Positions 14,936-64,000 of a stretch of 64,000 bases of DNA are shown here, piece after piece; the stretch's first letter is position 1; each line of letters begins with the position of its first letter. The notes beneath the pieces were generated by a model. The model saw nothing but the letters and a program-made list of their open reading frames with translations, searched no databases and had not been told where the DNA came from. The stretch is from the NCBI GenBank assembly GCA_964247055.1, contig OZ176052.1, forward strand, positions 10,044,001-10,108,000, in the 5' to 3' direction. The translations under genes and the position numbers were made by a program. This stretch comes from Paragordius varius (lineage: Eukaryota; Animalia; Nematomorpha).

Positions 14936-17900
14936 ATGAAAGTTTCCAGGCCTAGTAAATTGGATTTAAACCAATACTTTACCTGTTCACGCTCCTCGGT
15001 GATGAATTTTAAAGGTTAATAGAGGATTTAATTTATAGATTTATATGAAATGGGAAAAGAAATCGGGAAAGGTTCTAACTCTTGTGTATACGCATGTCGC
15101 CATAAGTATACTGGGCATTTATGTGCTGTTAAGGTCATAACCAAAAGTCAGGATGAACGACAAATTAAACGGTTTTATCGAGAGCTAAAAGTTTTTAAAC
15201 TTACTCAAGGACATCCTAATATCTGTCAATTATTAAATTCGTTTCAAGATCCTCTCAAGTATTTTATAGTGATAAATATATTTTCCTTCCTTATACATAA
15301 TTTAAAATGCACTATACCTTAATCAATATTTTTTTGGAACTAAAACTAACGTTTTTATATAACTACCGGAATATATGTTTAGATTTTACGCTGTTTTCGA
15401 AAACATGGAAGGTGGATCCCTTCTTCATCAAATTATGCGGAAATCTGTGTTCACAGAGGCCGAAGCTAGCCTAGTCACAAGGGATATTGCAAATGCTCTT
15501 TATTTTTTGCATAATATAGGTAGGTATCTGATATGATATATCCCTTTTTTTGCTGTTTATTAAACGCTTGTTTTTGATAATATATTTCGTTATTGATTTT
15601 TTGTTTCGTTTATAATGTGAATCAACTTACGATAAAATAATAATATTGGATTAATTAATTAATAAGCTTATGCTCTTTTGCTTGATATTTTAGATATCGT
15701 ATTATGTATATAATTTTATTCCTTTCCCTTGACGTAAACTAGTAAATACATATTTTTAAGATAATCTCTGCTAATTTTTATAAATTTTAAAAATGCGATG
15801 CCAAATTGTTACGTTTTTATCTCTCTTGTGCACATTAAAGGCGACACATTGCCATAAATTATACCAAACAGTTTAAAGTAGCAAAACGAATCATTTGTGT
15901 TTTATAATTATCAAAATTTTACTAAATCACGCTAAATTAATTTTACTACATAATATTTCTTTTTTGGTTAAAATTATATGGATTATAAGTGGTGGGTTAG
16001 GATTTTAAAGGAGGTCGGTTCTTTAATATCTGGACTTATAAATATTATATACAAATTTTTAATTATTTTAAAAATATTTGCACAATTTTAATATTTCAGG
16101 TATAGCTCATCGTGATCTCAAACCGGAAAATGTGTTATGCAAATTCAAACATTCTTTGATTCCAGTCAAACTTAGCGATTTCGATTTAGCTTCCGATTAC
16201 GAACTCATAAATGGGGAATATGGGCCCGAAACTTCCGATTCAAATAACGCTAATGGTGCATTTTATTTCACCAGTCAAACTCCCGAATTAACTACGCCTG
16301 TAAAAAAGATAACTTAAAATTTAAATTTTAAAATTACTCAATTTGTCGAAACACAAAATTATATACATTATTTATTTTTAGGTTGGTTCAGCCGAATTTA
16401 TGGCCCCCGAGGTTGTGGGGACTTATAAAGGACAAATCCATCATTACGATAAACGGTGTGATATGTGGAGTTTTGGTGTTATTATGTAAGTATTAACATG
16501 CACTTCTAGATATTTTTATTCAACGTGTTGTTCGGCTTTTATATTACCTATGCATGGTTAACCTAACACTAAGGCTACTGAATCCTAAGCCTAAATTAAT
16601 ATAAAAAATTTTCTAAACATATAACTTTATTAAGCATATGCACAGTATGCAACTATATGTTTTTGTCTTGTTAAAATACTTTATTTTTTTACTCAGCATG
16701 TCAAAATCTCCTAATTTTTATAACCTCAATATGTATAGGGTATTTACACCTAGATTATTTTAACTGTTTATATTTGCCATTGTTTAGTAGTAAAAATTTT
16801 TTATATAACATAATGTTTACTATGAAAAGTTAAATATTTACTAAAACTCAAAATATTTTGTTTTATTTGAACAAAGTTTGATATAATTCTAAATGCATTG
16901 GTCAAACTATAGTTCTATCCAAATTCTTTTCTATGATGTTGTTAAAATATCAACAAACATTAATATTATATTATTGGTTTCCTGTAAATGAGTAAAACGT
17001 GATTCGCAGGCAAATCGGCTATGTAAATATATTAATTATCTGTAGAAGATTCAAAAACTTATGCAAAAAACACATTATTATTTAACGCAATCTTAACCTT
17101 AGCCTTTTTCAAGGGATATGCCCTAAACCAGGGGTGTCCAACACAAATATTTTCGCCGCTGCTTTGATAATTTTTGGTTTTTTAAATATATTTAGAGTCT
17201 AATTTCGGATGATATATCTTTTAATAATTGTAAATTTTAGTTTTGTTATTGAAATCCAATTCTTTATTTTTTTAACATTTTTAGAATATTTTTGCGTACT
17301 GAAAAAAGCATGTTGGACATCCGTGCCTGAGAGTTTTTATATTTTGTATATGTTTAAAAAACGCTTCTGTATTTTTAAGCTGTATTTCTAAATAAAAATG
17401 GCGTAGAGTAGATATTTCCTTTTTTCTCATTATTTATATTCACAGGCTGTAATTCTTAAACGAGAAATGCTGTTAATAGCTATTATGAAATTTAAAAGAG
17501 AACTTTGGTGTTGTTTAGGTAGTTCTACGAAGAAATTGTACTTAAATTGGAACTATGATGAAAAAATTAAGCTATATATATAGCATATAAAAATATTACT
17601 ATGAAATTCACTAACATTTGTTGAAAGATTTAGTTTTAAGTCTTTATTGAATGATGAAGAGAATATTCCTCATGTCTAAATATTCCTGACTAAGTATTAT
17701 CATCTGAAACAATTCTTAGTGATACTAATCTCTTGTAATTTTTTGGTTGTTCTATATATCCCTGTAAGATTTTTTTTATCAATTTACCTCCTACTTATGT
17801 CAACATTATTGTTTATGTTATCCGCCTTCACATGTCAATTTAAGTTGTATCGTTTGCCTTTTTGCAGTTATTTTTTTGGGACTATGAATTTTTTCTGCTT

Positions 17901-63000: not shown

Positions 63001-64000
63001 ATTTTATATTTATATTCATCAATAAAATTATTATGTTTATAAAAATGCAATAACTTTTAGAATATAAAGATAAAAATTAAAAGTGTGATAACATTATACG
63101 GCTAGAATAAAATTCTAAAATATTATATTTCATTTGATTTAATAATATTAGTTTATTAATTATTGCGCAAATTTAACTTTCGCCTTCTTAAAGGATATGA
63201 ATGCGTATATTGATTTGTTCCTAATACATTTAATAACACTTTTTACTCAATAAGTTGCTAAAACAAAAAGCCTTACTTCGTTCGAGGACGTTGAATTTTT
63301 ATTATATTTAAATACTCCATTCACAAGCAATTAAAAATTAAACCTTATATGTGTGTCCAGATTGAATTTGGATAGCTTTTGACTCAAAATCAATATTTGT
63401 CACCACGGTACCTCTCCTTAAATTAATATTGTAATGGGTATAAAATTTTTCACATCTAAATGCAATTTTCCCAAAATTTGAGACATCCATAGTTTTCGTA
63501 ATTTGGGGCCGATCATATGGTAAGTTAATATCTTTTGCGATGATAGTTATGGGACCTATATGACCCTGTAATTAATGATCAAAAATATTAATGACAAATT
63601 CGTATTTTTCTAAAAAAATTTAAAAATAAAAATGTGTAAGGCTTATATTCAGTGGCAAAGTAGATAAAATAGTGTATTAATATATCTCAGCTAGTTAAAT
63701 TATAAATCTTACATTTTTTCTTAATGTTTCTGCACAAATCAACCCACAGGGTCCACTTCCAATAATATATATGTGAAATGCACTATCTTTAATATAATAA
63801 TTAATAAACGATTGTGGTTTTATAACGTATAAAGTTTCACTTATTCGTTTAACCTATATTAAAAAAACTTATACCTTAAAAGATAATAAATCATCCAATC
63901 CTGGATACTCTAAAATAGTTCCCGTTTTTAGATTATAACACGCACCATCATAAGGGCATCGAATAGTGTGACCATTTTGTACGCCTTTGATAAGGGGGCA
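60051..64000 (-). CDS. AIFM3: AIFM3-like paralog, copy B (5' end beyond window); exons >64000-63875, 63853-63713, 63565-63344, 62650-62485, 61783-61564, 61317-61095, 60943-60875, 60622-60479, 60311-60051
   Basis: All nine visible exons are open, with introns at the same positions and phases as copy A (IIGSGPCG, PYDRPQITK, IGNSFVGME, QHFQMA, VPYFYT, NRDPVAS). Key cofactor residues are altered (see findings). Confidence 0.92.
62858..62952 (+). mobile_element. hAT-like MITE fragment in an AIFM3-B intron
   Basis: TTTACAGTTTTATGTTTGAAATCCA...ATGCGGCCTGTGAAGCCATTT is colinear with 14577-14660. Confidence 0.55.
63854..63874 (-). other. 21-nt micro-intron in AIFM3 copy B
   Basis: GTATAAGTTTTTTTAATATAG at the same codon boundary (K|V) as the 23-nt intron 55199-55221 of copy A; retention gives an in-frame TAA. 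Confidence 0.9.

What the first reader, a model, noticed from the sequence alone, without database searches (positions are those of the whole stretch)
14936..64000. Micro-introns are always the 5'-most introns of their genes
Seen: RABL6 introns 1-4 are 23/22/22/24 nt, then 400, 393, 472 and 785. AIFM3-A introns 1-2 are 23/23, then 908, 381, 347, 245, 362, 216 and 95. AIFM3-B has 21, then 147-701. MNK has 24, then 124, 580, 82, 1573, 382, 348 and 212. No micro-intron lies downstream of a long intron, and all are within ~520 nt of the start codon. This is the reverse of the usual animal pattern of long first introns. Inference: tiny-intron splicing may be coupled to the 5' end (cap-binding complex, promoter-proximal Pol II state or trans-splicing), or TE insertions are excluded from 5' gene regions. 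The sample is only four genes, and ING has a 154-nt first intron.
Basis: partly seen in the sequence, partly recalled or inferred. Interest (0 to 1): 0.78.

Follow-up and report, generated by a model that had tools for sequence, protein, structure and literature searches.

The report
Tiny introns only at gene starts
In this AT-rich animal genome, real-looking introns of only 21-30 bases sit almost only in an unbroken run at the start of a gene, before the first ordinary intron, which suggests that cutting out such tiny introns depends on the front end of the transcript.

Summary
In the window, RABL6 has introns of 23/22/22/24 nt and then 400 nt. AIFM3-A has 23/23 and then 908. AIFM3-B has 21 and then 147. 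MNK has 24 and then 124 and 580. ING has a 154-nt first intron. Every tiny intron restores frame and homology.

I then sampled the rest of the 110-Mb genome: 13 Pfam families, 492 exon matches and 141 genes. Introns of 30 nt or less made up 12 of 68 junctions in the first 130 positions of N-terminal domains, and 0 of 138 junctions elsewhere (p = 8e-7).

Fifty sequence-checked tiny introns (mode 22-23 nt) lie 40-513 coding nt from the start codon. An order effect remains after allowing for position. Later introns in this zone are tiny in 22 of 34 cases when every upstream intron is tiny, but in only 1 of 20 when an ordinary intron lies upstream.

"Always" is too strong. A Rab27-like gene has a 23-nt intron after a 1174-nt one, and a myosin has a 32-nt intron deep inside the gene. 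Kilobase first introns are common, so exclusion of transposons from 5' regions fails as an explanation.

The scan has reported this polarity before on other DNA of this genome (s1-261289, s1-270280, s1-243168). Blood flukes are the published parallel. I had no RNA evidence, and the mechanism is inferred.

The parts
14936..15014 (+). MNK first coding exon (79 nt)
   Evidence: Joining it across the next feature gives ...MNFK|[18 protein letters not shown], the start of a protein kinase domain. The Pkinase match at C3:10059044-10059280 equals window 15044-15280.
15015..15038 (+). MNK tiny intron, 24 nt (gttaatagaggatttaatttatag)
   Evidence: GT..AG ends. Removing it restores frame and kinase homology.
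15259..15382 (+). MNK first ordinary intron, 124 nt, at coding position 299
   Evidence: Read from the sequence. The downstream exons and the introns of 580, 82, 348 and 212 nt were reproduced by the model.
26494..26516 (-). RABL6 tiny intron 1, 23 nt, coding position 133
   Evidence: GVSYN|[14 protein letters not shown] is continuous across it.
26365..26386 (-). RABL6 tiny intron 2, 22 nt, coding position 240
   Evidence...PTLQIQ|IANINWNF...[10 protein letters not shown] is in frame only after its removal.
26223..26244 (-). RABL6 tiny intron 3, 22 nt, coding position 360
   Evidence...FNNNK|NNLDFGILD.
26104..26127 (-). RABL6 tiny intron 4, 24 nt, coding position 455 (522 nt from the ATG on the genome)
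   Evidence...DVTRKW|[12 protein letters not shown].
25560..25959 (-). RABL6 first ordinary intron, 400 nt, followed only by long introns
   Evidence: Model.
54966..54988 (+). AIFM3-A tiny intron 1, 23 nt, coding position 45
   Evidence: Model; sequence.
55199..55221 (+). AIFM3-A tiny intron 2, 23 nt, coding position 255
   Evidence...DNLTCYK|VEKVRDNIY... The same junction exists in paralogue B.
55366..56273 (+). AIFM3-A first ordinary intron, 908 nt
   Evidence: Model.
63854..63874 (-). AIFM3-B tiny intron, 21 nt (gtataagtttttttaatatag)
   Evidence...DDLLSFK|VKRISETLY... It carries in-frame stop codons, and the exon behind it matches exon 3 of paralogue A.
63566..63712 (-). AIFM3-B next intron, 147 nt
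   Evidence: 309 = 21 + a 141-nt exon + 147.
13326..13479 (+). ING first intron, 154 nt, at coding position 451 (a gene with no tiny intron)
   Evidence: Model.

Best explanation
SHOWN. This genome has two classes of GT-AG intron. The tiny class is 21-30 nt (mode 22-23, about 82% A+T, 5' end GT[A/T], 3' end mostly TTTAG or TATAG). The ordinary class is about 50 nt up to several kb.

Tiny introns occur almost only as an unbroken run at the front of the coding region. The first lies within about 190-240 nt of the start codon. Successive ones are at most about 230 nt apart. The last lies no more than 513 coding nt (570 genomic nt) from the start codon. Once an ordinary intron has occurred, later introns are ordinary. 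Not every gene has tiny introns: about 40% of first introns are ordinary, and some of those are kilobases long.

INFERRED. The most likely mechanism is a limit on splice-site recognition. An intron of 21-30 nt is too short for the usual cross-intron pairing of U1 and U2. I propose it can be recognised only inside the cap-proximal first unit of the pre-mRNA, from the cap to the first ordinary 5' splice site, with help from the 5' end. That help could come from the cap-binding complex, or from early co-transcriptional assembly handed on from one tiny intron to the next. Everything behind the first ordinary intron would be handled by ordinary recognition, whose minimum here is about 50 nt (rarely 32-36). 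Selection would then keep 5' introns either tiny or ordinary, and would remove tiny introns that end up behind an ordinary one.

I put the pattern at about 0.9 and this mechanism at about 0.35.
For: - Window models.
- Genome sample (tabulated): 206 junctions with continuous HMM coordinates in 141 genes. Introns of 30 nt or less made up 12/68 junctions at HMM position 130 or below in N-terminal-domain families, against 0/138 elsewhere (Fisher 8e-7). The length estimate from coordinates alone matched the sequence-derived length within a few nt.
- Fifty sequence-checked tiny introns, including EF1A (24 and 22 nt), RhoA, Rabs, kinesins, HSP70 and CCT subunits: coding positions 40-513, median 174.
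- Order effect, from a hand-curated table scored: 22/34 against 1/20 (p = 1e-5). Restricted to coding position 225 or beyond: 12/21 against 1/20 (p = 5e-4). In genes that begin with tiny introns, 0 of 6 in-zone introns behind the first ordinary intron are tiny.
- Two discrete classes: only about four introns of 31-36 nt were seen.
- The AIFM3 paralogues kept their tiny introns at 21-23 nt, while their long introns drifted apart (908 against 147, 381 against 693, 347 against 701).
Against: - No RNA data, so neither the removal of these segments nor the true transcript 5' ends (5'-UTR introns) were seen.
- Start codons upstream of the first domain match are ab initio in part of the sample.
- The order test rests on about 40 hand-curated genes.
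- Exceptions exist. In the Rab27-like gene L058 a 1174-nt intron is followed by a 23-nt one at WDTAGQE|RYRS. In the kinesin heavy chain L049 a 54-nt intron is followed by a 33-nt one. A myosin has a 32-nt intron at about 1.1 kb of coding sequence, plus a possible in-frame intron of 27 or 36 nt.
- A steep fall with position, combined with gene-to-gene differences, could mimic part of the order effect.
- The role of the cap-binding complex is borrowed from yeast and mammalian work and is untested here.
Confidence: 0.4

Rival explanations
1. Mutational or chromatin explanation. DNA close to the promoter is shielded from insertions and has a deletion bias, so introns there shrink to the physical minimum. 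No special splicing mode is needed.
For: - Long introns in this genome vary freely between the AIFM3 paralogues, while the tiny ones do not.
- All but one tiny intron lie within 570 genomic nt of the start codon.
Against: - First or early introns of 1-3 kb, 57-400 coding nt from the start codon, are common (1863, 2976, 1174, 1978, 1081).
- Sizes fall into two classes, not a gradient.
- After an upstream intron of only 53-86 nt, which barely moves the next intron away from the promoter, the next in-zone intron was ordinary in 7 of 8 cases.
- The long intron of L058 is mostly unique sequence, not an obvious recent transposon.
Confidence: 0.2
2. Selection on the cost of splicing errors. Tiny introns are often retained, and retention is harmless only near the start, where it gives an early stop codon, a very short peptide and decay triggered by the downstream junctions. 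They therefore survive only there.
For: - The position limit of about 500 coding nt.
- Nearly all tiny introns have at least one ordinary intron downstream in multi-intron genes.
Against: - It does not predict the order effect at equal coding position.
- In-frame, stop-free tiny introns, whose retention would escape such surveillance, are not rare. Examples are the 8-residue insert in RhoA and similar inserts in RalA, Rab11 and a Rab8-like gene.
- Some genes have only tiny introns (L066, L055).
Confidence: 0.15
3. There is no true order rule, only a steep decline with distance from the start plus gene-to-gene differences: some genes are rich in tiny introns and others have none.
For: - The share of tiny introns falls with coding position.
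- Many genes have none.
- First introns that lie beyond about 240 coding nt were ordinary in all 6 cases seen.
Against: Within genes that do start with tiny introns, 0 of 6 in-zone introns behind the first ordinary intron are tiny. At the same positions, 12 of 21 are tiny when all upstream introns are tiny (p about 0.006).
Confidence: 0.15
4. Artefact. The tiny introns were invented to bridge frames in poorly conserved 5' regions, or they reflect assembly frameshifts.
For: 5' ends are less conserved, and unanchored models do produce false tiny introns.
Against: - The junctions fall inside highly conserved motifs of EF1A, RhoA, Rabs, kinesins and HSP70.
- All have GT..AG ends, a narrow length range and a T-rich 3' end.
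- The same unbiased detection found none in 138 deeper junctions.
Confidence: 0.03

Closest known systems
Small introns at the 5' end of Schistosoma mansoni genes (Berriman et al. 2009, from my own knowledge; Protasio et al. 2012, PMC3254664, read)
   Same: An animal genome with long introns in which the first few introns of many genes are unusually small. [quoted passage not shown]
   Different: - A different phylum.
- Here the small class is 21-30 nt and sharply separated from ordinary introns.
- I show an order effect beyond position.
- No mechanism is published for the fluke pattern in the text I could read.
Ultra-short (30 bp or less) introns of dicyemids and myxozoans (PMC13644364, Mol Biol Evol 2026)
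   Same: Animal GT-AG introns of 20-30 nt with a reduced 5' signal (GTa), lying between conserved exons.
   Different: - In those parasites, by my own knowledge, the short class dominates compact genomes. The passages I read do not state this.
- The passages I read mention short neighbouring introns but no 5' polarity, and they do not mention this lineage.
- Here tiny introns are a minority, they coexist with kilobase introns rich in repeats, and they are limited by position.
Cap-binding-complex help for the cap-proximal intron (yeast and mammalian work, from my own knowledge)
   Same: It gives a known route by which the 5' end of a transcript favours recognition of the nearest 5' splice site.
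   Different: It is known as a modest kinetic effect on ordinary introns. It is not known as a condition for a separate size class, and it was not tested here.
Usual animal pattern of long first introns
   Same: Intron length depends on ordinal position.
   Different: The polarity is reversed in genes that carry tiny introns. Other genes of this genome do have long first introns.

Membership tests
Spliceosomal U2-type (GT-AG) introns | GT at the 5' end and AG at the 3' end | tested here: met
   All 50 listed tiny introns.
Spliceosomal U2-type (GT-AG) introns | Removal restores an open frame and continuous homology | tested here: met
   Continuity of HMM coordinates. Conserved motifs span the junctions. 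The RhoA model aligns without a gap at the 23-nt junction.
Spliceosomal U2-type (GT-AG) introns | Pyrimidine-rich 3' end and a branch-point-like A | tested here: inconclusive
   The 3' end is TTTAG in 16 of 43 and TATAG in 6 of 43. Branch-like TNA[T/C] motifs are scattered without one sharp distance to the 3' end.
Spliceosomal U2-type (GT-AG) introns | Absent from mature RNA | not testable with these tools
No protein from this species turned up for RhoA in the large protein collection; the best identity was 88%. I did not check it.
Schistosome-type 5'-to-3' intron size polarity | Small introns concentrated among the first introns, larger ones downstream | tested here: met
   12/68 against 0/138 junctions. 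Coding positions 40-513.
Schistosome-type 5'-to-3' intron size polarity | Same size range and same cause as in flukes | not tested
   I read only the statement in PMC3254664. The original genome paper was not held.
Ultra-short-intron genomes (dicyemid or myxozoan type) | Introns of 30 nt or less | tested here: met
   46-47 introns of 21-30 nt.
Ultra-short-intron genomes (dicyemid or myxozoan type) | The short class is the prevailing intron type throughout genes | tested here: not met
   0 of 138 junctions outside the 5' zone. Most introns are 50 nt to 3 kb.

The most novel reading that the evidence does not exclude
An animal runs two modes of intron recognition on the same transcript. One is a cap-proximal mode that can remove introns of 21-30 nt and is passed along an unbroken chain of tiny introns, with a reach of about 230 nt per step. 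The other is the ordinary mode, with a minimum of about 50 nt, for everything behind the first ordinary intron. The minimum intron size would then depend on position in the transcript, not only on the species.
Probability: 0.3. Interest if true: 0.85.

Novelty: new variant of a known kind. Interest (0 to 1): 0.62.

Why it matters
Minimum intron length is usually treated as a fixed property of a species' spliceosome. A sharp size class that depends on position and order, within a single genome, would make the link between the transcript's 5' end and splice-site recognition directly testable, for example with moved-intron reporters, cap-binding-complex knock-down, or long nascent-RNA reads.

It also matters in practice. 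Standard gene finders with a minimum intron of 30-40 nt will mis-model the first exons of a large share of genes in this genome, including EF1A, RhoA, Rabs, kinesins and chaperonins. In-frame tiny introns will then be annotated as odd peptide insertions.

Tried and rejected
- Unanchored ab initio splice modelling missed the tiny introns of weakly coding genes.
- A version that favoured tiny introns invented tiny introns and mini-exons inside long introns. I therefore counted only junctions supported by domain matches or by conserved motifs.
- A predicted 30-nt intron deep in an HSP110-like gene (L046) proved to be a modelling artefact.
- Predicted long first introns in L073, L076 and L077 dissolved into tiny introns, or into no intron, when I read the reading frames.
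- The Pkinase table was not used, because only 124 of 502 candidates were scored. Mito_carr was not used because its repeat coordinates are ambiguous.
- A search with the large RhoA exon for a protein of the same species, as a stand-in for RNA, found none.
- The Rfam SL1 search was uninformative: only 50 of about 38,000 candidates were scored, and the controls were silent.
- I tested whether the 1174-nt intron of L058 is a recent transposon. Only an 85-bp piece is repeated elsewhere.
- Joined (spliced) protein models were never sent to a search tool. Exons were searched by reference, and joins were made only inside scripts from the held files.
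Full report
WHAT THE WINDOW IS. The window is AT-rich (22-35% G+C) animal-type DNA from contig C3 (10,044,001-10,108,000) of a 110.56-Mb assembly in 44 contigs. Earlier notes of this scan call the organism a relative of horsehair worms. I did not test that. A preprint states that the nematomorph genomes studied so far are 200-300 Mb, so I leave the identity open.

CHECKING THE OBSERVATION IN THE WINDOW. 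I read the sequence and used a splice model guided by the open reading frames.
- RABL6 (minus strand, ATG at 26649) has GT-AG introns of 23, 22, 22 and 24 nt at coding positions 133, 240, 360 and 455. Each joins conserved GTPase motifs (GVSYN|[27 protein letters not shown]|TLDYIL). These are followed by 400 nt and three more long introns.
- AIFM3-A has 23 nt at position 45 and 23 nt at 255, then 908, 381, 347, 245 and 362 nt. My model merged the last two reader introns because it missed a small exon.
- AIFM3-B has a 21-nt intron (63854-63874) at the same codon as A's second tiny intron, then 147 nt.
- MNK has a 24-nt intron. The exact coordinates are 15015-15038. It is followed by 124 nt (15259-15382), 580 and 82 nt, and so on.
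- ING has a 154-nt first intron at coding position 451.

HOW I SAMPLED THE REST OF THE GENOME. I searched the assembly, exon by exon, with Pfam models: Cpn60_TCP1, Kinesin, Ras, Myosin_head, HSP70, SNF2, GTP_EFTU, Proteasome, Actin, Adaptin_N, Myosin_tail, HECT and tRNA-synt_1. UQ_con was read by eye.

Each pair of neighbouring matches with continuous model coordinates gives an intron length: the genomic gap minus three times the coordinate gap. Where I also had sequence, this estimate agreed with the real length within a few nt. Detection by this route does not depend on position in the gene.

On these loci I ran my own dynamic-programming splice model, forced through the domain matches.

RESULT 1: POSITION. 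There were 206 continuous junctions in 141 genes. Introns of 30 nt or less made up 12 of 68 junctions within the first 130 model positions of domains that start at the protein's N-terminus. They made up 0 of 138 junctions elsewhere (Fisher p = 8e-7). The smallest deeper introns were 32, 52, 60, 64, 67, 69 and 71-78 nt.

The sequence-checked list holds 50 tiny introns. Their lengths are 21-30 nt, mode 22-23, plus two of 33 nt and one of 36 nt. They are about 82% A+T. The 5' end is GT followed by A or T, and the 3' end is mostly TTTAG or TATAG.

Coding positions run from 40 to 513, with a median of 174. The distance from the start codon on the genome is at most 570 nt, with one exception.

The list includes very conserved genes, where the junctions cannot be doubted on homology grounds:
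- EF1A: 24 and 22 nt.
- RhoA: 23 nt. The model then aligns without a gap to mollusc, beetle and starfish Rho.
- Several Rabs, three kinesins, HSP70 and CCT subunits.

RESULT 2: HIDDEN TINY INTRONS. Tiny introns whose length is a multiple of three and which contain no stop codon do not break the frame.
- RhoA carries an 8-residue insert (VFLHIMMK) that all homologues lack.
- RalA, Rab11, a Rab8-like gene and others show similar inserts.
- A scan of all modelled exons with a splice-signal score trained on the known tiny introns found such candidates at coding positions 49-368. Only one lay deeper, at 1519 in a doubtful terminal exon.
- A myosin has a possible in-frame intron of 27 or 36 nt deep in the gene.

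RESULT 3: ORDER, NOT ONLY POSITION. I curated by hand the introns lying within the first about 520 coding nt in about 40 genes with trustworthy 5' ends, and scored the counts.
- A non-first intron is tiny in 22 of 34 cases when every upstream intron is tiny.
- It is tiny in only 1 of 20 cases when any upstream intron exceeds 36 nt (p = 1e-5).
- Restricted to coding positions of 225 or more, the figures are 12 of 21 against 1 of 20 (p = 5e-4).
- In genes that start with tiny introns, none of the 6 in-zone introns behind the first ordinary intron is tiny.
- The effect also holds when the upstream ordinary intron is only 53-86 nt. Genomic distance from the promoter alone therefore does not explain it.
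- Consecutive tiny introns are never more than about 232 nt of exon apart. First introns that lie beyond about 240 coding nt were ordinary in all 6 cases.

These counts are small and hand-made. They point to an unbroken chain starting at the 5' end.

EXCEPTIONS AND LIMITS.
- L058, a Rab27-like gene (C3:6597273-6600632, minus strand), has a 1174-nt first intron followed by a 23-nt intron exactly at WDTAGQE|RYRS. That long intron is mostly unique sequence.
- L049, a kinesin heavy chain, has a 54-nt intron followed by a 33-nt one.
- A myosin (C5, about 4,360,290) has a frame-restoring 32-nt intron at about 1.1 kb of coding sequence, behind long introns.

So "always" is too strong, and introns of 31-36 nt are less restricted than the core class.

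Tiny first introns are also not universal. About 40% of first introns are ordinary, and some are 1-3 kb long although they lie 57-400 coding nt from the start. That contradicts the idea that transposon insertions are kept out of 5' gene regions.

WHAT COULD NOT BE SHOWN.
- I had no RNA. The large protein collection held no Rho protein of this species (best identity 88%).
- The true transcript 5' ends are unknown, including any introns in the 5' UTR.
- As a weak pointer, the 80 nt upstream of 33 start codons show no enrichment of acceptor-like sites, and 9 of the 33 have no AG at all. This speaks against a nematode-style trans-splice acceptor just upstream.
- The Rfam SL1 search was uninformative.

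HOW IT MOST LIKELY WORKS (INFERENCE). The two discrete size classes, the chain-like layout and the order effect fit best with a limit on splice-site recognition. Introns of 21-30 nt would be recognisable only in the cap-proximal first unit of the pre-mRNA, perhaps with help from the cap-binding complex or through early co-transcriptional assembly handed on from one tiny intron to the next. Everything behind the first ordinary 5' splice site would use ordinary recognition, with a minimum near 50 nt.

The AIFM3 paralogues support long-term maintenance. Their tiny introns stayed at 21-23 nt while the long ones drifted by hundreds of nt.

The rivals are:
- a promoter-proximal mutational bias, weakened by the kilobase first introns and by the bimodal sizes;
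- selection on the cost of intron retention, which does not predict the order effect;
- a pure position gradient with gene-to-gene differences, disfavoured by the within-gene counts;
- artefact, which I regard as excluded.

COMPARISON WITH WHAT IS KNOWN. Protasio et al. [quoted passage not shown] That is the closest parallel, from another phylum and, by my own knowledge, with a less extreme size class.

A 2026 paper (PMC13644364) states that introns shorter than about 30 bp are generally considered absent from animals, and that they arose at least twice, in myxozoans and dicyemids. The passages I read mention neither this lineage nor a 5' polarity.

This scan has already reported the same polarity on other pieces of this genome (s1-261289, s1-270280, s1-243168). 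What this report adds is:
- a position-unbiased sample of 141 genes with statistics;
- the exceptions;
- the hidden in-frame class;
- the evidence that order matters beyond position;
- the rejection of the transposon-exclusion idea.

VERDICT. I rate it a new variant of a known kind, with interest 0.62.

Noticed in passing
L069:259-702 (minus strand; C5:8097280-8099642), also L054, L055, L059, L066: In-frame, stop-free tiny introns of 21-27 nt read as short peptide insertions. Examples are VFLHIMMK in RhoA, YHIYLRSR in RalA and an 8-residue insert in Rab11. Frame-based methods and gene finders will miss them.
   Followed up: partly
L071 (C5:4359900-4360700, minus strand): A myosin gene has a frame-restoring 32-nt intron at about HMM position 313. 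It also has an intron-like in-frame segment of 27 or 36 nt (gtaaaataggtaaaattttatatatttgtgtgtcag) just before the LLDIYGFE motif, deep in the gene.
   Followed up: partly
window 1-11200: A tandem array of about 1.6-kb units, each with ORFs of about 106 and 88 codons on the minus strand. Other notes call it a Helitron-related satellite. I did not examine it.
   Followed up: no
window 54900-64000: The two AIFM3 paralogues lie tail to tail (A on the plus strand, B on the minus strand), with their last exons about 800 nt apart. Intron positions are shared, but the long-intron lengths differ several-fold.
   Followed up: partly
G000 C10:1742396-1742872 and C11:1307111-1307587: Two intronless Ras-family ORFs with identical scores on different contigs. 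Several full-length intronless kinases and one intronless SNF2 domain also exist. These may be retro-copies or recent duplicates.
   Followed up: no
G000 C5:12954178-13040878: Four near-identical kinase-domain matches (HMM positions 60-153) spaced 15-50 kb apart on C5. This looks like a local gene family or a segmental repeat.
   Followed up: no
L058:565-1737 (intron 1 of the Rab27-like gene): An 85-bp piece of this intron recurs at 91-96% identity at four other places in the genome. It is probably a small dispersed repeat.
   Followed up: no
80 nt upstream of 33 start codons (loci L032-L077 and the window genes): Nine of the 33 have no AG dinucleotide at all in the 80 nt upstream, and none has a strong acceptor-like site. 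There is thus no sign of a trans-splice or 5'-UTR intron acceptor close to the start codon.
   Followed up: partly
sample of about 40 genes: Exons between consecutive tiny introns never exceed about 232 nt. First introns lying beyond about 240 coding nt were ordinary in all 6 cases. This suggests a chain with limited reach, not a fixed zone.
   Followed up: partly
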